DNA from: Antechinus flavipes
Taxonomy: Eukaryota
Length of the DNA stretch: 64,000 nucleotides
Assembly: GCF_016432865.1 (NCBI RefSeq)
Contig: NC_067399.1
Span: 49,290,001 to 49,354,000 of the forward strand
Direction: 5' to 3'
Every line of letters begins with the position of its first letter. Position 1 is the first letter of the stretch. Below the pieces are notes generated by a model, which saw only the letters and a list, made by a program, of their open reading frames with translations, did not search any database and had not been told where the DNA came from. Below, in pieces: positions 16,243-53,460 of the stretch. Position numbers and translations under genes: made by a program.

Positions 16243-16376
16243 GAGACACACCTGCATGCTTTATCTGCACCCCTGACATCCAGCTGTGCGAGACACACCT
16301 GTATGTTTTATCAGCTTCCCTGACATCCAGCTGTGCGAGACATACCTGTATACTTTATCTGCACCCTGACATCCAG
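16243..16376. repeat. Tandem repeat, 3 x 47 bp
   Basis: Unit gagacacacctgYatgYtttatctgcacccctgacatccagctgtgc, starting at 16243, 16290 and 16337 (third copy partial). Confidence 0.9.
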
Positions 16377-18460: not shown

Positions 18461-21400
18461 AGGTGGGGGAGGGGAACCCGAAGGGGAGGAGCAGCACCTG
18501 AAGGGAGGGGGAGGGGGAAGAGAGGGAAGCTCCTGTGGGGAGGGGGAGCCCCGTAGAGAAGGGAAAGGGGGAGGGGGAGAAGAAGGAAGCCCCTAAGAGG
18601 AGGGGGAGACCCTGTGAAAAGAAGGGGGAGGGGGAGAAGAGGGAAGCCCCTTTGGGGAGGGGGAGCCCCGATGAGAAAAGAAAGGGGGAGGGGCAGGGGC
18701 GGTCTCGAGAGGGAGGGGGAAGGAGAGGGAAGCCCTTTGAGGACGGGGAAGTCCCTGAGAGAAAGGAAAGGGGAGCCCCTTTGAGAAAGGGGAGTCCTTG
18801 TGAAGAAGGGTCCCCATGAGTACAGGAAAAGGGATACAGACCCCTCTTGTGCAGACCCTTGTCTCTCACCTGCACACTCGAGCTCGCTGCCCCGGCTGAA
18901 GGGCTGACTGAGGGGGGCGGGGCTGTCATGCTTTGGGAGACTTTCGGGCTCCAACTTGAATGGTCTCCCGGCTTGCAGTCATTGTATGCAGCTCTTCACT
19001 TTCCGGGGCCTTTTCTATGCGAGTATTTTTTAAATGCCTATTGGGTGCCCGGGGCAGGGGAGGGGGAATATAAGAAAGCCTGGCGCGGTCTGTGACCCCG
19101 AGGATTTCACCCCGCCGCGTGTTCTTGAGTGGGAGGGCACCAGGAGGAGCGTGGACAGCCCGGGAAAGGCGGGGAGCTTCCCCCAAAGTGGCGCTATCCA
19201 GTCTTTGCTCAGGTCTCCGCCTGGTGCTTCTGTCTATCCAGTGATCAGCCGGGTTTGTGGGTTTGTTTTTTTATCAGTGAAGATAAGAGAACTAGCTTCG
19301 CGGGGAGTTGGCTTGACAAAGTAGCCTGCCTGCAGCTGGGAGCCTGCAGGAATAATGGACATGATCTAAGACCTTCCTTTGAGGAGACTTATGGCTCTTG
19401 TTAATAAGAAGGAGCCAACTCAGAAGCTGGAGAACAGGTAGAGAAGCAGGTTGAGCCACTAGCCCGGCAGGGAAGGAGGAAGGTGCTAAATGCCGTGGGC
19501 ACTATGAAAGCCAAATTCCTGGATCTCGTTCTTTTTCTCTTACTTATTTTCTTGGGAAACAGGTTTCCCTTGATGCAGGACTTCTACAAGAATTCTTATT
19601 GGCTTCATGATAATTATTGAAGGTCATCAAGTTACCTTAATTGCTAGAGCCCCACTGAGATTCCACAGCCCTAGACTGACAGACAGATCTGTCCCTCCAG
19701 TATTAACTATAGAAAACTTTCCAGGGAATGTTCTAGGGTTGCAAAGGAAGAAGGTCCCCCATTTTTGACTAGAACTCTTAAAGCATCTCATAATCCCAGG
19801 GGACTGAATCATATTCGTTATGCCTTAGGACAAAGATTAACATGGATACAGTCTCAATGCATGAAACCATAAATCTAATGTATGTTTTTAGATTCCTATA
19901 TATCCAACAGGGGGATGGAAAAAACTGTAAAGTAAGAGGTGACTCAAGGATCTTTCTGAACTTACTGATTTATTTTAAAAATTTTAAATCCTTGAAATAG
20001 AAAGTTTTAAAAGCTACAGGTTCACTTCATGATCAAGAGTGTGAAATGTTAGCTTATAGCTACTAATATCCTTAAGTAAAAATTTCATTTCTTTCTTATA
20101 TTTAAGAAGTCAGAAAGAAATTGTCCAGTTGATTTCCAGTCATTCACTGCTTAATATTTATGTAGTTTAAGCTTTATAGATATCAATAGCACTAATTAGC
20201 CCTTTAGGAGAGAAAAAATAGAATCAACCAATATTGGGTGCAATAGAAAGTCTTCATTCCTTGAGAAATGGGAGAGTTTTACCTGTTGTTTGAGATGATT
20301 GCGTTCTCTAGACCTGAACCAGGTGGAGTCCTTACTTGACTTTGCCTTTGCTGACCTTGCCTTCTCTTTCCCTCTGGAAAATAGGAGGCTTACCTGGAAT
20401 ACCTGAAGAGCATCCACTACATTTCCCAGGTGCTGCTGGAAGAAGCAGGGACTACAAAAGGTACCAAGGGACTTGGAAATGTTGGTTCTTCCTTTGATAA
20501 GAGCAGATGCACTGCCTTCTCATTACTTGGCAGGTCCTATATGTCACTTTTTCTTTTTTTCTTTTTTTTTTTTTTTTTTTACCCCAAACTTCTCAGAATA
20601 GAAGAGATTCAGCACTTGAAAGTTGGTCATAGCCAATCTCAGTTGTTTCCAGAGAAAAATTCCAAGGTCCTCAAAATTTATTCTCTGAAGTCTCTTTAGA
20701 GGACATGGTCCACAAACTTTCTTCCTAAGTAGGAAGACTAAGGAGAGCCCTCTGTTTATAGGTGGATTCTGTTTTGTCTCATTGTTGGCTATATGTGAAG
20801 ATGAGGGGGAAGGATCTATACTCATTGGTCTATTCAATAGAGTACTGATCTGAGGATCAGAAGACCTAGTACTCATTCCTGATGGTCTTAGAAAAGTTTG
20901 ATACTCCCTTCTCATTCTTAACTCTGACATTGGGAGTCAAGTCAGTTCTTCTCCTTGGACTACTTGCTCCAAATGTGTAAAACAGAAGCAGTAATTCTAG
21001 TGCTTTTTTTCCTTCCACCAAAAAGCTCAGAATATAGATGAGGAAGGAGGAAAAGAAAAAAGAGAACACTATAAGATTAGAATGTGTTCCTCAGGGAACA
21101 CTGAGAATGGGATAATTTTTGCTCACTTTACCCTTTATCTTGCCCTAGCTTGGGGAGAATCTTATTTGGAGATCCAATTGAACCCAAATTATTGTCTTAT
21201 TTCTCCATCAGACGGGGGTGACACTGTGACTTCAGATACTCCAAAGATGCTGAAGCTGGCTGAGCAGTGTTTGGAAAGGGCCAAGTCAACAGCTGCCAAA
21301 CTGGGTGAGTGTATGCTTAGCAGAAGAAAGAGCTCGCTGGGATTTCTTTCTCTCCTTCAGCTTTTAAATGCAATATGATCTAGTTTCTTCTGACCCTTGG

Positions 21401-47367: not shown

Positions 47368-47757
47368 TCACAGCTTCCCCTCTGAGGTCAAGACCTGAAG
47401 ATCAGTGGGGGAGTCTACACACAGCACAGTGTGCGAGACGGCAAGCTTATCCACCAGGGAGGCCACGGCCTGGCCCACCTCCAGGTGGCTGACATAGCCA
47501 GGAGCCAGCGCTTCGGGGCGTGCAACCCCCATATTGATCTTCACCTGGAGGGTGGGCAGAAAGAGACATCGTCGGCCGCTCTCTTCCCCATTTAGGACAG
47601 AGGTCGATGGAAGATGGGGGGTTGGCCCATTTAAGGTTCAACTCAAGTATATCCTCCTATAAGAAGCTCCTCTCCAGGCAGCCTCCTCCATCCCTATTCT
47701 CTTTCGACTTTTCTGCATCTATATCTATATCTATATAGATATAGATATAGATTCACA

Positions 47758-47803
<46 letters not shown>

Positions 47804-48529
47804 CCTTCTTCCCTTCCATAGAAAGGGACAGCTTTGTAGGTTCCTGGCATCTGTCACTAAGCTTTTATTAACTACTTAGTGGTTTAAACTCACATGGGAA
47901 AGAACCGTCCTCTCTGAATATCTGCAGGAACTTCTGGCCAGGTCTTCCTACCTTGATTCTTGCCCTTCCAACCTTCCCTTCAAACCGACTGTCAGACTGA
48001 CTTTTCTTGTGTATGCAATGGGTCACGTATGTTTTAAAAGATCTTATCGCCTTCTGAATAAAGATCAAAATGTTTTTGCCTGATCTTACAAGCCTCTGCA
48101 ATTCCAGGCTTATTCAATATTATTTCTTTATGTGTCTGCTCCATACAGACTAGACAACATATCAATATATTCTGTCAGTTAACAAGCAACTATTAAATAT
48201 CTACTCTGGACAGGCCCTGCGTTCCATGCTATCCTCTATGTTTACACCTTCCCTTCTTCAAATGCTAAATGGAGATGTAGGTCACTTAATCCTGCTTGCC
48301 TCAGTTTCCTCATCAGGAAAATGAGTCGGAGAAGGGAATGGCAAACCACGCCAGTATCTCTGCCAAGAAAACCCCAAATGGGATTAGAGAGTCTGACATG
48401 ACTACAGTGACTAAACATTAATACACTAGAATAAAGCCATCGAGCCATTCGCCCCAAGGTAGGAAATGTGGAGAGCACAGGCAATAATATTGTCATATCA
48501 TCTGTACTTCCTGGTGTTCTTGGATGAAT

Positions 48530-48569
<40 letters not shown>

Positions 48570-51500
48570 CCTCCATAACACATGTACTGCTGATTGCCCC
48601 AGGCACAAAAATCACTCATAGCTCTGCAAATTCATCCTGATTTTACAAAATCCAACCCAAATGCCACTTTCTCTATGAAGTATTCCCTGATCCCTCAGTC
48701 AGGAAAGACCCTTTCCTCCTTACATCTTACATAACAGCTCACAGATATTGTTTGTATTACAGCCAGCTGCATCCCTCTTCTAGACCCCAAAATCAGGGGA
48801 GCAGGGGCTGTGTCTTACCTAAAATCTTGCTGTCTCTTCCAGAGCTAGCCCAGGGGGGCTGACATGAATACTGATATTTTTTGGTTAGTCAGACTTGTAG
48901 TGTTCCTCCTCCCTGCCCTCTACCTCAGATGCCTGAGACACACCCTCATCCATAGACATTTCCCCTAAGGCTCCTTACCTCATTCAGCTTACAGGGTACA
49001 TCAGGGTATTCCTCACGCACCACCTTGCTGAAGGATAGAGCCCCTGAGGCCCCCAGGGTCAGGAAGCCTGTGCCCGGCCTGAGCAAATGATCTCCTGCCC
49101 CACCTAGAAGACAGTAGAAAGGTGGGATAGAAACTGGGCAAATGTTCTCCTGTCCCCCTAGAAGAGAGTGGAAGGGTGGGATAGGAGCTGGGCAAATGAT
49201 CTCCTGTCCCCCTAGAAGAGAATGGAAGGATGGGATAGGAGCTGGGCAAATGTTCTCCTGTCCCCCCCCAAAGAGAGTGGAAGGGTGGGATAGAAGCTGG
49301 GCAAATGTTCTCCTGTCCCCCTAGAAGAGAATGGAAGGATGGGATAGAAGCTGGGCAAATGTTCTCCTGTCCCCCCCCAAAGAGAGTGGAAGGGTGGGAT
49401 AGGAGCTGTGCAAATGTTCTCCTGTCCCCCCCCCAAAGAGAGTGGAAGGGTGGGATAGGAGCTGGGCAAATGTTCTCCTGTCCCCTCCCAAAGAGAGTGG
49501 AAGGGTGGGATAGGAGCTGTGCAAATGTTCTCCTGTCCCCCCCCCCAAAGAGAGTGGAAGGGTGGGATAGGAGCTGGGCAAATGTTCTCCTGTCCCCCCC
49601 CAAAGAGAGTGGAAGGGTGGGATAGGAGCTGTGCAAATGTTCTCCTGTCCCCCCCCCCCAAAGAGAGTGGAAAGGTGGGATAGGAGCTGGGCATCCAGCT
49701 GTGAGGTGAGACAGAAGGGGATTACTCTGCCAGGGCTCCCCCAACCCCCAGGGGATCCCAGAATAGCACCGACCTGTTGGTGCTTATTGCTCAGTCCCAG
49801 GGTCAGAGCCTCACCTGTGATAAAGGTGTATGAGCCCCTCGGGTTCTCCCAGACCAGGGGAAAGAAGGCTTTCCAGGCAGTGAAGGTACTCAGGAGCAAG
49901 GTCTCCAGGACCTAAGCAGGAGGGAGCTTTTTCTTAGCTACAGTTCTCCTTGCCTTTCCCTCTCGCCCTCCCCCACTGCTATCCTCTTCCCTTCTTCCTC
50001 CCTCGCCCCACAGCCCCTCCGTACCCACTGTAGCTCCTTCAGGCTCTGAGTGTGGGGCGCTCCCCCTTGCCACCAGCTGAAACCCAAAGAGGAGACCACA
50101 TCAGTGACCTTCCTGCCTCCTTCCAGCAGAGACACCTTTGCTGCTTCTGCTCCATCCTCAGTGCCTGTGGAAGGAAAGGGAGCCAAGGGGGTGGGTAAAA
50201 GACTGAAGCTCCCCCTTCCCTCTGTTCTGTCTTGGAGAAAGCTACTGAAAAGTTCTCTGAAGACAGCCACATTTCTCTAGGAGTGAGAGTGTCAGGGTAC
50301 CTAAGGAAAGGAGTATTTGTCATTCCTGGATCATCCTAGCCCCAGATGGCTCTTAGGAGCTGCCCGAAATCAGGGAGCCCCAGAACAGCCTCTTGCTGTG
50401 ACATAGTGTTTAACCTCTGCAGTCAGAGGACCAGGATTCAAATCCCATTTCCAACACTTACTATCCTTGCGATTTGGGCCAAATGTTTAAACTCTACGGG
50501 CTTCGATTTCTGCAATCTACAAATGGAAAGAGTTCTGGACCTCTCCTCAGGGGTCTGGCCACTGGATATGATTCCCTTCTGGGTACTTTATACTCTTTAC
50601 AAACTGAATGACTTTTCTCTTTCTGTCAGCCAACAGGTATTTATTAAACACTTACTGTTTGCTGGGCACTTCCCAACTTCAAATGCTATAAATGTAGCTG
50701 TAACTAAGATGGGATCATCAGGACTTTGTCCCAAAGGTAGACAATGTAGAAAACACAGAGGATAATATCATCAGTACTTCCTAGTGTCTCAGAGTATATC
50801 TATCCCCTTCTTTAGTGACTGCTCATGGCCATGCAGGTAATGTCAGAAATGGAAAATGAACTCAAGTCTTCTGATACCAAATCCAACACTCTTTCCACTG
50901 CTCTGCCTCCAGAGCAGAAGTTCTTAATTTTCAGTCTGTGAACTTTAAAAAAATTTTTAAATAATATTTTATTCTTCCCCAATTAAATATTAAAACAATC
51001 TTCCTTTTTTCACATTTAAATTTTACTTTTTTTTTTAGGTTTCAGTTTCAATTTCTATCCCTCCAACAGTTTGGCAGAAAAAAAATGACAAATGTATTTT
51101 AATAGAATTTGTTTCCTTTATAAAACTGTGTGTTTTAATTTGTGCATTTAAAAACATTATTTTGAGGAAGGGTCCAGGCTTTACCAGCCTGATTAAAAAA
51201 TCCAGCAAAAGTTAAAAGCCCTGCTTTAGGGTACTATTTCATGTCTTCTTTTCAGTATTAATGTATGAATCTCTGATTGAAGTTGCTGGATTTAATTCAG
51301 GGAGTTCAGGGACAAGTTCTCACCTTTCTTTCCCCTCAGCCTTCAGCTTTGGTTCCTGCCGGCTCCTCCCTGTTCATTTTTCCCCAGAACACATGAAGAG
51401 TTCACATTTGCCTCTTGATGCAAGACCAAGACCCAGCCCCACTGCCAGGGGCACTCCCAGAACCCCTGTCGCACCCCACCCTAGAGCGGAGCTGGTGACT

Positions 51501-53460
51501 CACCAACATCCCCGACCACAGTGAACAGGCGATTGTGGGCTTCTGCTGGTAGGAAGTTCCGAAGCTTCTCCAGGCGTGTAGCATCCCGGGAAATGACAGC
51601 CACTTGGAACCCTATGGAGGTGGAGGAAGGTCAGGAGGTAGAAATAGGAATCTACAGGATGGGATCCCAATGGCTAAAAGTGTGGCCAGGAGAATCTCTG
51701 TCAAAGCTGGTCCTGTACACGGAAGCAAATGAGTCCCAGAAATTTAGAATAAGGAGCCCCAGAAACCATCTAACCCAAGTAACAGGAGAAAGTAGAATTA
51801 GAGGAGATCAGAGTTCAAATCTCAACTGTCACTTCCTTTAATTTTAGACAAGGCTTCCCCTACTTGGGCTTTGATTTTCTCATCTCTAAAATGAGAGAGC
51901 TAATAGATGAAGATAATGGAATAATATTATTGTTCTATAAAAATTGATGAACAAGCTGATTTTAGAAAGGCCTGGAAAGATTTACACAAAGTGACACTGA
52001 GTGAAACAAGCAGAACCAGGAACACATTGTACACAATGATAGCAATTTTATGCAATGATCAACTATGAAAGACTTGCGTTCTTTTCAGTGGTTCAGTGAT
52101 CCAAAGCAATCCCAATAGACTTAGGACAGAAAATGCCATCTGCAGCCAGAAAAAGAACTATGGAGATTGAATATAAATCAATACATTTCACTTCTTTTTT
52201 TCTGTTTTTTTCCCCCTCTCCCATGGTTTTTCCTTTTTGCTTTGATTTTTCTCTCCCACCGTGATTCATAAAGCAATGTGTATTAAAAACAAATAAATTT
52301 TTAAAAAATTTAAAACAAATAAAACCAGAGAGCTGGAAGACATAAAAGTCAGAGGAGACCAGGGTTCAAATATCAGCTCTACTAGTTCCTTCAATTTCCT
52401 CATTTCTAACAGGAGAGAGCTAGAAGATTCAGAGTTGCTTCATCTTTTTTTGTTCCATGGACCCTTTTGGGGCTTAGGAAGCCCATGGAATTCGCAAAAT
52501 GATAAATATTTTAAAATTCATAATTGTTAAATTGCTGGATTTCACTTAAATATTAGTGAAAATGAAGACTTTTTTTTTTCACCCAAGTTCATGGACCCCT
52601 TGAAATGTATGCATGGATTCCAGTTAAGAATCCCTGAATTGGATTCTTTCTATTTGAATTTTCTAGGACTATAACCATTACATTTTATGGACTAACTGAT
52701 GTCCAGATTTAAATAATCTGACCCAGGGTGATCCAGAGAAGGAGTGTGGGAGATGGGGATTGGAAGGATTGGAACCCTAGGTCCAGTTCTTTCGGTCCTG
52801 GGATCTACAATCGGGATGTTCTCCCACTAGGCTCCTGGCCAATTCTCATCCCAGCTCTGCACATCCTTCTCCCCCCAAGTGAAGTGCACTGGAAAAAAAG
52901 AAAGGGCTTAAAAAAAAAAAAAAAAAAAGCAGCACTTAATCAGACTCATTGTCCAGCCGCCTCTACGGATTCCCGGGGCTCGAGTGGAATGAAAAATATG
53001 GTTTAGCTCCTTCCCAGGTGGCTGGGAGAGTATCCTTCCAGGATCTTGGGGAGCGAGACTGGACTTACATCCCCAAGGTAAAACACCGGCAAGGTGGAGT
53101 GGAAAGCACATTGGATTTGCATTTATAGTCAAAGGACCTCGGTTCAGAGCTCGACTTTGTTACTTCCTACTCGTGTGACCTCTTTGGGTCTCAGTGTCCC
53201 CTTTTGTAAAATGGCAACTTGGACTCAAGTTCCTTCTAGTTCTAAATCCTAGGACCAGACTTCCTCAATCTGGGATTTCCTAACACTCCCACCCTGTATC
53301 TAGCCTGTGGCTTCGAGCTCCCACCCACCTGGGGGCCATGGTCCCACCCATCCCACTCCCCCCGAAGTCTCTCACCCTTCTCCAGGAGCGACTTCACAAT
53401 CCCAGAGCCCACGGTCCCAGCTCCTCCCAGCACGAGGACCAGGCGCTCAGAAGGGGACAT
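47368..53460 (-). CDS. Uncharacterised Rossmann-fold / atypical SDR-like NAD(P)-binding protein, 6 exons, 243 aa
   Basis: Exons: 53460-53376, 51611-51504, 50164-50025, 49911-49815, 49103-48979, 47544-47368. All GT-AG, phases 1,1,0,1,0, 732 nt with no stop or frameshift. Protein: MSPSERLVLVLGGAGTVGSGIVKSLLEKGFQVAVISRDATRLEKLRNFLPAEAHNRLFTVVGDVGTEDGAEAAKVSLLEGGRKVTDVVSSLGFSWWQGGAPHTQSLKELQWVLETLLLSTFTAWKAFFPLVWENPRGSYTFITGGAGDHLLRPGTGFLTLGASGALSFSKVVREEYPDVPCKLNEVKINMGVARPEALAPGYVSHLEVGQAVASLVDKLAVSHTVLCVDSPTDLQVLTSEGKL*. The ATG has A at -3. Confidence 0.9.
47717..47802. repeat. Perfect 36-bp palindrome (ATCTAT)3(ATAGAT)3 next to (CA)21
   Basis: Palindrome arms at 47717-47734 and 47735-47752; CA run at 47761-47802. 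A second run, (CA)16, lies at 48535-48566. Confidence 0.95.
48280..48415 (+). mobile_element. CORE-SINE with RTE-derived tail (MAR1-like); an antisense copy lies near 54345-54540
   Basis: CORE gtcacttaa...cctcagtttcctcatc followed by ggagaagggaatggcaaaccacgccagtatctctgccaagaaaacccc. Confidence 0.7.
49083..49690. repeat. Minisatellite (VNTR), 11 x 54-58 bp
   Basis: Units start at 49083, 49138, 49192, 49246, 49301, 49355, 49410, 49466, 49521, 49578 and 49633. Consensus gcaaatgttctcctgt[C5tag|C8-11]aagagagtggaagggtgggataggagctg(g/t). Confidence 0.95.
51915..52320 (+). mobile_element. LINE-1 3' fragment in intron 1 of the SDR-like gene (antisense to it); another fragment near 53925-54250
   Basis: ctgagtgaaacaagcagaaccaggaacacattgtacac...cagaaaatgccatctgcagccagaaaaagaactatggag, ending in an A-rich tail. 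Confidence 0.8.

What the first reader, a model, noticed from the sequence alone, without database searches (positions are those of the whole stretch)
49083..49690. A minisatellite made of tandem copies of a 3' splice site, with in-frame alternative acceptors
Seen in sequence: the first unit overlaps the real exon-5 acceptor of the SDR-like gene (ttctag|GTGGGGCAGGAGATCATTTGC, exon start 49103). Each unit is therefore a pyrimidine tract, an acceptor position and the first ~20 nt of the exon. Four units keep the AG (exon starts 49103, 49157, 49211, 49320). In the other seven the AG is replaced by a G-run of 8-11 nt (one interrupted) on the pre-mRNA. The acceptors at 49157 and 49211 are exactly 54 and 108 nt upstream, in frame and stop-free, and would insert one or two 18-aa units (GGQENICPVSIPPFYCLL; GGQEIICPAPIPPFHSLL). 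The acceptor at 49320 is frameshifting. Inference: repeat number and AG/G-run variant could tune splicing, giving protein-length isoforms or NMD. The insertion would follow the FITG strand, next to the presumed active site. The G-runs could recruit hnRNP H/F or fold into G-quadruplexes.
Basis: partly seen in the sequence, partly recalled or inferred. Interest (0 to 1): 0.75.

Follow-up and report, generated by a model that had tools for sequence, protein, structure and literature searches.

The report
Tandemly repeated splice acceptor in marsupial gene
In carnivorous marsupials the border between intron 4 and exon 5 of a conserved enzyme-like gene has been copied head to tail 3 to 11 times, leaving spare look-alike splice sites; this is a real but already known kind of repeat, and nothing I could test shows that the spare sites are used.

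Summary
A 55-nt x 11 array (49079-49693, minus-strand gene) ends in the real exon-5 acceptor. Four units keep the AG and seven carry G-runs. The acceptors at +54 and +108 nt are in frame and open.

The window is Antechinus flavipes. The gene is LOC127547769, a 243-aa SDR-family protein. My six-exon model equals XP_051830715.1 exactly, so 49103 is the annotated acceptor.

Every orthologue compared, from sharks to marsupials, reads FITG[G/S]AG without an insert.

The array is specific to dasyurids:
- Four other marsupials have a single copy in a 160-181-nt intron.
- Sminthopsis has 3 units, Sarcophilus about 7, Antechinus 11.
- The unit ends fall on an old 7-nt near-repeat (TGCCCAG...TGCTCAG) 55 nt apart, which suggests slippage or unequal exchange.
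- The terminal unit is conserved between species; interior units are homogenised within species.

The in-frame spacing is not conserved: the other two genera have mostly frameshifting decoys. The gene is under purifying selection (dN/dS 0.09-0.15).

This matches boundary-spanning minisatellites already described: amphioxus "mirages" and the human F7, 6-16 and CBS donor arrays.

Only one protein isoform is on record.

Verdict: a new member of a known kind, of moderate interest.

The parts
47368..53460 (-). Gene LOC127547769 of Antechinus flavipes (SDR family, 243 aa). Six coding exons: 53460-53376, 51611-51504, 50164-50025, 49911-49815, 49103-48979, 47544-47368 (stop codon included).
   Evidence: The exon model translates to a protein 243/243 identical to XP_051830715.1 (P0153). 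Locus L004, fetched for that protein, equals the window segment exactly. Precomputed Pfam hits are PF00106 and PF13561.
49815..49911 (-). Exon 4. It ends ...TTTATCACAG (YTFIT + first base of Gly144). The donor GT is at 49814-49813.
   Evidence: Read from the sequence. The junction is confirmed by identity to the annotated protein.
49104..49814 (-). Intron 4, 711 nt. The lower 590 nt are array sequence.
   Evidence: The same intron is 160-181 nt in Monodelphis, Vombatus, Dromiciops and Trichosurus.
49079..49693 (-). Minisatellite of 11 units of 54-58 nt. It spans the intron 4 / exon 5 boundary; its last 25 nt are the start of exon 5.
   Evidence: TRF score 929. Unit table and alignment.
48979..49103 (-). 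Exon 5. The authentic acceptor AG is at 49105-49104 (cttctag|GTGGGGCAGGAG).
   Evidence: Annotated protein identity. This terminal unit is 98% identical to the Sarcophilus terminal unit.
49157..49159 (-). Decoy acceptor 1 (AG 49159-49158, exon start 49157). It lies +54 nt, in frame and open, and would add GGQENICPVSIPPFYCLL.
49211..49213 (-). Decoy acceptor 2 (AG 49213-49212, exon start 49211). It lies +108 nt, in frame and open, and would add 36 aa.
49320..49322 (-). Decoy acceptor 3 (AG 49322-49321, exon start 49320). It lies +217 nt and shifts the frame. The stop falls at 49015-49013, 34 nt before the exon-5 donor.
49370..49693 (-). The youngest part of the array: the six upstream units. 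All have the AG replaced by a G-run. GCCCAG and GCACAG variants alternate, which gives the period-109 (about 110 nt) higher-order repeat. Apart from the first unit (one extra difference) and the interrupted run of the fourth, the units of each variant differ only in G-run length.
   Evidence: TRF period 109 at 93%. Unit sequences.
49262..49269 (-). G-run of the one AG-less unit that lies among the AG-bearing units. The other G-runs start at 49659 (11 G), 49601 (8), 49546 (10), 49489 (GGGAGGGG), 49434 (9) and 49378 (8).
49079..49085 (-). TGCTCAG in exon 5 (+19 to +25). It pairs with TGCCCAG at intron position -37 in the single-copy state of other marsupials, 55 nt away. These are the likely breakpoints of the first duplication.
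   Evidence: Single-copy sequences of Trichosurus, Dromiciops, Monodelphis and Vombatus. The array end at 49079 coincides with this motif.
49698..49700 (-). Older pseudo-acceptor (ctcacctcacag|CTGGATGC) just upstream of the array. It is present 38-42 nt upstream of the real acceptor in the single-copy species.

Best explanation
This is a minisatellite that spans an exon-intron boundary, the type called a 'mirage' in amphioxus. It arose in the ancestor of dasyurid marsupials.

Origin (inferred): a ~55-nt piece covering the last ~36 nt of intron 4 and the first ~19-25 nt of exon 5 of a conserved SDR-family gene was duplicated in tandem. The likely route is slippage or unequal exchange between two pre-existing near-identical 7-mers, TGCCCAG and TGCTCAG, 55 nt apart.

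Later history (shown): the array has grown and turned over independently, giving 3 units in Sminthopsis, about 7 in Sarcophilus and 11 in Antechinus. The copy that abuts the true exon body is the authentic acceptor. It is conserved between species and yields the conserved 243-aa protein. Interior copies are homogenised within each species. Some lost the AG (CTAG to CTGG or TTGG), which created G-runs. In Antechinus the AG-less form was then amplified as ~110-nt dimers.

Decoy use (inferred, not shown): the remaining upstream AG copies are probably silent or only weakly used, as in most described cases of this kind. The copy next to the genuine exon sequence and its donor would win by exon definition. 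The in-frame spacing of two decoys in Antechinus would then be an accident of a 54-nt unit.
For: - The array and its unit anatomy are real.
- The window is A. flavipes, and the exon model is 100% identical to XP_051830715.1.
- Four non-dasyurid marsupials have a single copy with a 160-181-nt intron. Dasyurids have 3, about 7 and 11 units at the same place. Intron 4, array included, is identical in the two Sarcophilus assemblies.
- The microhomology sits at the unit borders in the single-copy species.
- The terminal unit is 98% identical between Antechinus and Sarcophilus but only 81% identical to its own neighbour. Mean identity among Antechinus units is 91%, against 83% between Antechinus and Sarcophilus units.
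- The junction FITG[G/S]AG is uninterrupted in all orthologues compared, and columns T143, G144, A146 and G147 are invariant in 46 orthologues.
- dN/dS is 0.09-0.15 against four other marsupials, so the gene works despite the array.
- Decoy frames differ between species.
- No isoform with an insert appeared in three protein searches, and the dasyurid proteins carry no isoform label. Other marsupials do have labelled isoforms, at other junctions.
- Precedents: amphioxus mirages did not disturb normal splicing (PMC3087553). The pseudo-donors of F7, LMNB2 and PDGF are silent (PMC1557585).
Against: - No transcript data could be examined.
- The decoys have core signals at least as good as the real site: 18/20 pyrimidines before TAG|G against 17/20. 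Sequence alone gives no reason for them to be silent.
- In the human 6-16 and CBS donor arrays the two pseudo-sites nearest the exon are used (PMC1557585). Some use of 49157 and 49211 is therefore plausible.
- The lack of an insert isoform in databases is weak evidence. No transcript-derived dasyurid copy of the protein turned up either.
- The slippage origin is inferred from the microhomology only.
Confidence: 0.78

Rival explanations
1. One reading: the AG-bearing units are working alternative acceptors. Copy number and the mix of AG and G-run units would tune the ratio of the 243-aa protein to +18/+36-aa isoforms or to a frameshifted product, as a regulated feature.
For: - The decoys at 49157 and 49211 are in frame and open, with core signals equal to or better than the real site.
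- An insert would land in a flexible loop after strand 138-144, so it might be tolerated.
- In the human 6-16 and CBS genes the two proximal pseudo-donors of comparable arrays are used constitutively (PMC1557585).
Against: - The in-frame spacing is not shared by Sminthopsis (+55) or Sarcophilus (mostly frameshifts).
- Only one protein isoform is on record in all three dasyurids, and no insert-bearing protein was found in the databases.
- The junction residues T143, G144, A146 and G147 are invariant in the 46 orthologues aligned.
- The frameshift product from 49320 would probably escape NMD, because its stop lies 34 nt before the last junction.
- The interior units behave like neutral, homogenising minisatellite copies.
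Confidence: 0.12
2. The expanded G-run units act as an intronic splicing enhancer or insulator. They would bind hnRNP H/F or mark the region as intron, and would have been selected to keep the upstream decoys silent and to help the real acceptor.
For: - Seven of the ten upstream units in Antechinus carry runs of 7-11 G, and this form is the one that was amplified.
- An AG-to-GG loss is also seen in one unit each of Sminthopsis and Sarcophilus.
- From my own knowledge, intronic G-triplets near splice sites are known enhancers.
Against: - The seven G-run units trace back to one or two mutated units that were later amplified, so they count as few independent events.
- Three intact decoys lie between most G-run units and the real site, where the G-runs could not shield them.
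- Sarcophilus keeps five AG-bearing decoys.
- There is no canonical G-quadruplex motif and no unusual RNA structure.
- G-triplets are already common in the single-copy introns: 5-7 per ~170 nt.
Confidence: 0.08
3. The array, or its size, is an assembly artefact of a long-read assembly.
For: - Only one A. flavipes assembly was available.
- It was built from PacBio CLR reads with wtdbg2 and polished with 100-bp reads (PMC9290055). That method is error-prone in homopolymers and cannot polish a 600-nt repeat well.
Against: - Homologous arrays lie at the same boundary in Sminthopsis and in two independent Sarcophilus assemblies, whose intron 4 is identical to each other.
- The units carry ordered variants: the alternating GCACAG/GCCCAG pattern and the AG units clustered near the exon. 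Collapse or expansion errors are unlikely to produce this.
- 100x long reads easily span 615 nt.
Confidence: 0.02

Closest known systems
[quoted passage not shown] 2010, PMC3087553, which cites the Adh3 work)
   Same: - A tandem repeat whose unit spans an exon-intron boundary. In BflGb6 the unit is the 3' end of an intron plus the 5' part of the next exon, as here.
- Many but not all copies keep the AG.
- Copy number varies: 3 against 6 units between haplotypes there, 3, about 7 and 11 between genera here.
- Interior units evolve in concert while the boundary unit is exempt.
- Normal splicing was reported to persist.
   Different: - A cephalochordate rather than a mammal.
- The units there are 10-160 nt.
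- Polymorphism within a species was shown there but could not be examined here.
- Splicing was tested there by RT-PCR and was not tested here.
Human minisatellites that reiterate a splice donor: F7 IVS7 (37 bp), interferon-inducible 6-16/IFI6 (25 pseudo-donors), CBS intron 13, LMNB2, PDGF (Borensztajn et al. 2006, PMC1557585)
   Same: - A mammalian gene in which one end unit of a minisatellite contains the authentic splice site, so identical pseudo-sites are repeated in the intron.
- The authentic site is the copy that adjoins the exon.
- Pseudo-sites are silent in F7, LMNB2 and PDGF.
- The two nearest pseudo-sites are used in 6-16 and CBS.
   Different: - Those arrays repeat the 5' splice site; this one repeats the 3' splice site together with its pyrimidine tract.
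- The authentic copy here is the most downstream one, so a simple 5'-to-3' 'first site wins' rule like the one proposed for F7 would not pick it.
NAGNAG and other short-distance tandem acceptors
   Same: Neighbouring AG acceptors that can add or remove whole codons.
   Different: Those acceptors lie 3 nt (or a few nt) apart within one pyrimidine tract. Here whole acceptor modules are repeated every 54-55 nt. The comparison rests on my own knowledge and was not tested.

Membership tests
Boundary-spanning minisatellite ('mirage' type) | Head-to-tail tandem repeat with minisatellite-sized units | tested here: met
   Period 55, 11.1 copies, 90% matches, score 929.
Boundary-spanning minisatellite ('mirage' type) | The repeat unit contains an authentic exon-intron boundary: intron end plus exon start | tested here: met
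   The terminal unit holds the acceptor at 49103 used by the annotated 243-aa protein. The array runs 25 nt into exon 5.
Boundary-spanning minisatellite ('mirage' type) | Derived from the local single-copy boundary, not from a dispersed element | tested here: met
   Four non-dasyurid marsupials have the homologous sequence once at the same place. The unit occurs nowhere else in the 64-kb window. The rest of the genome was not searched.
Boundary-spanning minisatellite ('mirage' type) | Copy number is unstable between haplotypes or species | tested here: met
   3 units in Sminthopsis, about 7 in Sarcophilus and 11 in Antechinus. Variation within a species was not testable. Intron 4, array included, is identical in the two Sarcophilus assemblies.
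Boundary-spanning minisatellite ('mirage' type) | Interior units evolve in concert while the boundary unit is exempt | tested here: met
   The terminal units of Antechinus and Sarcophilus are 98% identical, but the Antechinus terminal unit is only 81% identical to its neighbour. Within-species identity is 91% against 83% between species. In Sminthopsis, by contrast, the terminal unit is homogenised with its neighbour.
Boundary-spanning minisatellite ('mirage' type) | Normal splicing persists despite the repeated splice signals | not testable with these tools
Indirect evidence only: one annotated isoform, dN/dS 0.09-0.15, and no insert-bearing protein found.
Regulated alternative 3' splice sites that produce protein isoforms | Transcripts that use the alternative sites exist | not testable with these tools
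   No reads were available. No protein with the insert was found in three database searches.
Regulated alternative 3' splice sites that produce protein isoforms | The reading frame of the alternative sites is conserved in related species | tested here: not met
   Antechinus has +54 and +108 in frame. Sminthopsis has +55. Sarcophilus has +53, +107, +161, +244 and +298 out of frame, and only the weaker AAGAG sites at +105 and +159 in frame.
Intronic G-quadruplex element | Four G-tracts of at least 3 G with short loops | tested here: not met
   No match to G3+ with loops of 1-12 nt in intron 4. Only two-tetrad patterns occur, inside single G-runs.
Short-chain dehydrogenase/reductase (host gene) | Match to the Pfam families adh_short and adh_short_C2, with a Rossmann-type glycine motif | tested here: met
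   Precomputed PF00106 and PF13561 hits on P0153 and its orthologues. GGAGTVG at residues 12-18 is conserved. The AlphaFold2 model has alternating strands and helices, mean pLDDT 85. Single exons alone gave only a weak Epimerase hit.

The most novel reading that the evidence does not exclude
In Antechinus the two proximal decoys (49157 and 49211) are used at an appreciable, perhaps tissue-dependent, level, as the two proximal pseudo-donors are in human 6-16 and CBS. That would give lineage-specific SDR isoforms with an 18- or 36-residue Pro/Cys-rich insert in the loop next to the cofactor and substrate site. Minisatellite copy number would then act as a heritable dial on isoform ratio.
Probability: 0.1. 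Interest if true: 0.6.

Novelty: new member of a known kind. Interest (0 to 1): 0.35.

Why it matters
Minisatellites that repeat a splice site are rare natural experiments on how the spliceosome chooses among identical signals. The mammalian cases named in the paper I read (F7, 6-16, CBS, LMNB2, PDGF) all repeat the donor site.

This locus offers the acceptor-side counterpart, and three related species carry 3, about 7 and 11 copies. Here the authentic site is the last copy, not the first. A simple 'first site encountered' rule cannot explain correct splicing, so exon context must decide.

The locus also shows how such arrays are born (microhomology at the unit borders) and how they age (AG loss, G-run growth, dimer amplification).

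For the biology of the host gene, the evidence so far points to no effect.

Tried and rejected
The decisive junction count was not done, and I sought no workaround.

2. Pfam scans of single exons gave only a weak Epimerase hit for exon 1. A first attempt failed on a frame error.

3. My early guess that the genome was a cetartiodactyl, based on a SINE-like translation, was wrong. Protein identity shows Antechinus flavipes.

4. Joined spliced model. Exon 6 alone was searched by reference. Later searches used database proteins, including P0153, which equals the model. The joined translation was built only inside local scripts, for comparison with stored proteins.

5. I searched for insert-bearing or transcript-derived dasyurid proteins. 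None were found, but canonical transcript-derived copies were absent too, so this has low power.

6. The look-up of encoding contigs failed for P0160 and P0040, because only the longest isoform is indexed. Using P0161 and P0159 solved this.

7. G-quadruplex and RNA-structure ideas. There is no canonical G-quadruplex motif. Fold z-scores range from -1 to +1.

8. Branch-point prediction by eye found no clear yUnAy motif inside the units, so I dropped it.

9. No quantitative splice-site scorer was available offline. I compared only pyrimidine content and the flanking bases.

10. No supplementary expression tables of the A. flavipes genome paper are held.

11. None of the loci fetched is human.
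Full report
**What is there**

On the minus strand, Tandem Repeats Finder reports a single array at 49079-49693. It has period 55, 11.1 copies, 90% matches and score 929, with an alternative period-109 reading at 93%. It is the strongest tandem repeat in the window. Its 45-nt core occurs nine times within 3 mismatches, only inside the array, against none expected by chance.

Cutting the array at the anchor CAGGAGA gives 11 units of 54-58 nt.
- Four units keep ...CTCTTCTAG|G. These would give exon starts at 49103, 49157, 49211 and 49320.
- Seven units have the AG replaced by G-runs of 11, 8, 10, 3+4, 9, 8 and 8.
- The six upstream units alternate GCCCAG and GCACAG variants, so they form three nearly perfect ~110-nt dimers.

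**The host gene**

I read six exons from the sequence. Single exons were too short for Pfam. A search of the representative library with exon 6 alone, by reference, found full-length relatives. Word searches with those database proteins then showed a 243-aa SDR-family protein (PF00106, PF13561). It is conserved from sharks and teleosts (zebrafish name si:dkey-238o13.4) to reptiles, platypus and marsupials.

The joined exon model was never sent to a search tool. Inside local scripts it proved 243/243 identical to XP_051830715.1, 'uncharacterized protein LOC127547769' of Antechinus flavipes. The locus fetched for that protein is identical to the window. So the window is A. flavipes chromosome record CM028218.1, and 49103 is the annotated acceptor.

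**The junction is conserved**

- All orthologues compared read ...YTFITG[G/S]AG[D/E]... with no insert.
- T143, G144, A146 and G147 are invariant in 46 orthologues.
- dN/dS between Antechinus and Sarcophilus, Sminthopsis, Trichosurus or Dromiciops is 0.09-0.15, so the gene is under purifying selection.
- An AlphaFold2 model (mean pLDDT 85) places residues 138-144 in a beta strand, followed by a low-confidence loop at 145-155.

**Origin and evolution of the array**

I fetched the orthologous loci of seven other assemblies.

| Species | Intron 4 length | Copies of the boundary sequence |
|---|---|---|
| Monodelphis | 160 nt | 1 |
| Vombatus | 175 nt | 1 |
| Dromiciops | 180 nt | 1 |
| Trichosurus | 181 nt | 1 |
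| Sminthopsis | 273 nt | 3 |
| Sarcophilus | 462 nt | about 7 (one truncated) |
| Antechinus | 711 nt | 11 |

Intron 4 is identical in the two independent Sarcophilus assemblies. That, together with the ordered unit variants, makes an assembly artefact unlikely. The G-run lengths in a Pilon-polished PacBio CLR assembly are still uncertain (PMC9290055).

In the single-copy species a TGCCCAG lies at intron position -37 and a TGCTCAG at exon position +19, 55 nt apart. These are exactly the unit borders. I infer that the first duplication arose by slippage or unequal exchange between them.

The terminal unit, which carries the real acceptor, is 98% identical between Antechinus and Sarcophilus but only 81% identical to its own neighbour. 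Interior units resemble each other more within a species (91% in Antechinus) than between species (83%). This is the usual pattern of minisatellite turnover, with the boundary unit held by selection. Loss of the AG by change to G occurs in all three genera. In Antechinus that form was then amplified.

**Are the decoys used?**

Indirect evidence against appreciable or functional use:
- The in-frame spacing is peculiar to Antechinus. Sminthopsis has one decoy at +55 (frameshift). The Sarcophilus decoys at +53, +107, +161, +244 and +298 shift the frame, and only the weaker AAGAG sites at +105 and +159 are in frame.
- The dasyurid proteins carry no isoform label, while wombat, opossum and tammar do have labelled isoforms at other junctions.
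- No protein with the 18- or 36-aa insert was found in three searches that admitted lengths up to at least 280 aa.

This evidence has limited power, because no transcript-derived dasyurid copy of the normal protein was found either.

Evidence that leaves leaky use open:
- The decoys have 18/20 pyrimidines before TAG|G against 17/20 for the real site, so their core signals are as good.
- In the human 6-16 and CBS donor arrays the two nearest pseudo-sites are used (PMC1557585).

- The frameshifted product from 49320 stops 34 nt before the last exon junction. By the 50-55-nt rule (my own knowledge) it would escape NMD.
- Intron 4 has no canonical G-quadruplex motif, and the RNA folds no better than shuffled sequence.

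**Mechanism proposed**

Shown:
- The array is a dasyurid-specific tandem duplication of the acceptor region.
- The last copy is the conserved, annotated acceptor.
- Interior copies turn over and lose their AGs.

Inferred:
- Every AG unit carries the same pyrimidine tract and candidate branch adenosines. The choice of the last copy must therefore rest on context. That context would be the genuine exon-5 body beyond +25 and its donor 125 nt downstream (exon definition). In addition, any decoy-extended exon would contain whole pyrimidine tracts and, for 49320, a G-run, and both are typical exonic silencers.
- The G-run units may also mark the region as intron, but I see no evidence that they were selected for this.

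**Comparison with known systems**

[quoted passage not shown] These include an acceptor-side case in globin gene BflGb6, where copy number varies between haplotypes, interior units evolve in concert, and RT-PCR showed normal splicing (PMC3087553).

In mammals the known counterparts repeat the donor. They are F7 IVS7, LMNB2 and PDGF, where the pseudo-sites are silent, and 6-16 and CBS, where the two proximal pseudo-sites are used (PMC1557585).

My literature searches found no mammalian acceptor-side case. They cover open-access text only, so I do not claim there is none.

**Verdict**

This is a new member of a known kind of element. It is a neat natural model for 3' splice-site choice, of moderate interest.

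The earlier scan notes s1-196598 and s1-196683 on the same gene agree with what I found. The gene is intact, and no eutherian orthologue appeared among the best hits. The YxxxK motif is absent in this protein, and it is equally absent in all its orthologues.

Noticed in passing
window 47368-53460 (whole gene): This 243-aa SDR-family gene (zebrafish si:dkey-238o13.4) has orthologues in sharks, ray-finned fish, lungfish, amphibians, reptiles, platypus and marsupials. No eutherian protein appeared among the best 120 hits of three searches, including searches with marsupial queries. That suggests the gene was lost, or is not annotated, in placental mammals. Source names such as 'PECR-like' and 'L-fucose dehydrogenase-like' look like automatic guesses.
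   Followed up: partly
window 48979-49103 (exon 5) and alignment A1: The helix where classical SDRs carry YxxxK reads LGA[AS]GAL[AS]F in the whole family (F168 invariant, no Tyr/Lys pair). The missing catalytic motif is therefore a family trait and not a defect of this species. The region between strand 138-144 and this helix is modelled with low confidence (pLDDT below 50 at residues 147-154).
   Followed up: partly
window 49698-49700; L005-L008 about 40 nt upstream of exon 5: An older, strong-looking pseudo-acceptor (pyrimidine tract + CAG|CTGG) lies 38-42 nt upstream of the real exon-5 acceptor in all marsupials examined. It is in frame and open in Dromiciops and Vombatus, yet it is not used in any annotated protein.
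   Followed up: no
window 49095-49097 (CAG 9 nt inside exon 5): A CAG|G lies 9 nt downstream of the real TAG|G. It is present in all marsupials (tgcag|gag). If used it would delete three conserved residues in frame. Each G-run unit has the same ACAG|GAG just after the G-run, and this is the first AG after its pyrimidine tract.
   Followed up: no
window 49079-49103 vs L005-L008: The two amino-acid changes that set dasyurids apart at the start of exon 5 (Ser145 to Gly, Arg149 to His) lie inside the repeated exon segment. Either they predate the duplication or they were spread by conversion between units. In Sminthopsis the exon start (GGGGGG) is identical to its upstream unit, which shows that conversion can reach the coding part.
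   Followed up: no
L003 6176-6545 (Sminthopsis): A (GA)185 microsatellite sits in the intron between exons 5 and 6 of the Sminthopsis orthologue. The same interval holds only short GT/TG and AC runs in Antechinus and Sarcophilus.
   Followed up: no
P0136 (koala LOC144457191, 268 aa): The koala has a second, diverged protein record. It has a different N-terminus, a 3-residue deletion (FLT) in the otherwise invariant PGTGFLTLG segment, and many substitutions. It may be a decaying duplicate of LOC110210282.
   Followed up: no
window 16243-16376 and 18506-18693: Two other small minisatellites lie in the window: 47 nt x 2.9 copies and a G-rich 60 nt x 3.2 copies. I did not examine them.
   Followed up: no
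P0159 (wombat X1), P0161 (opossum X1), P0156 (tammar X2): Other marsupials have annotated alternative isoforms of this gene at other junctions: +9 aa at exon 1/2, +6 aa at exon 2/3, and an alternative 3' end. None is at the exon 4/5 junction.
   Followed up: partly
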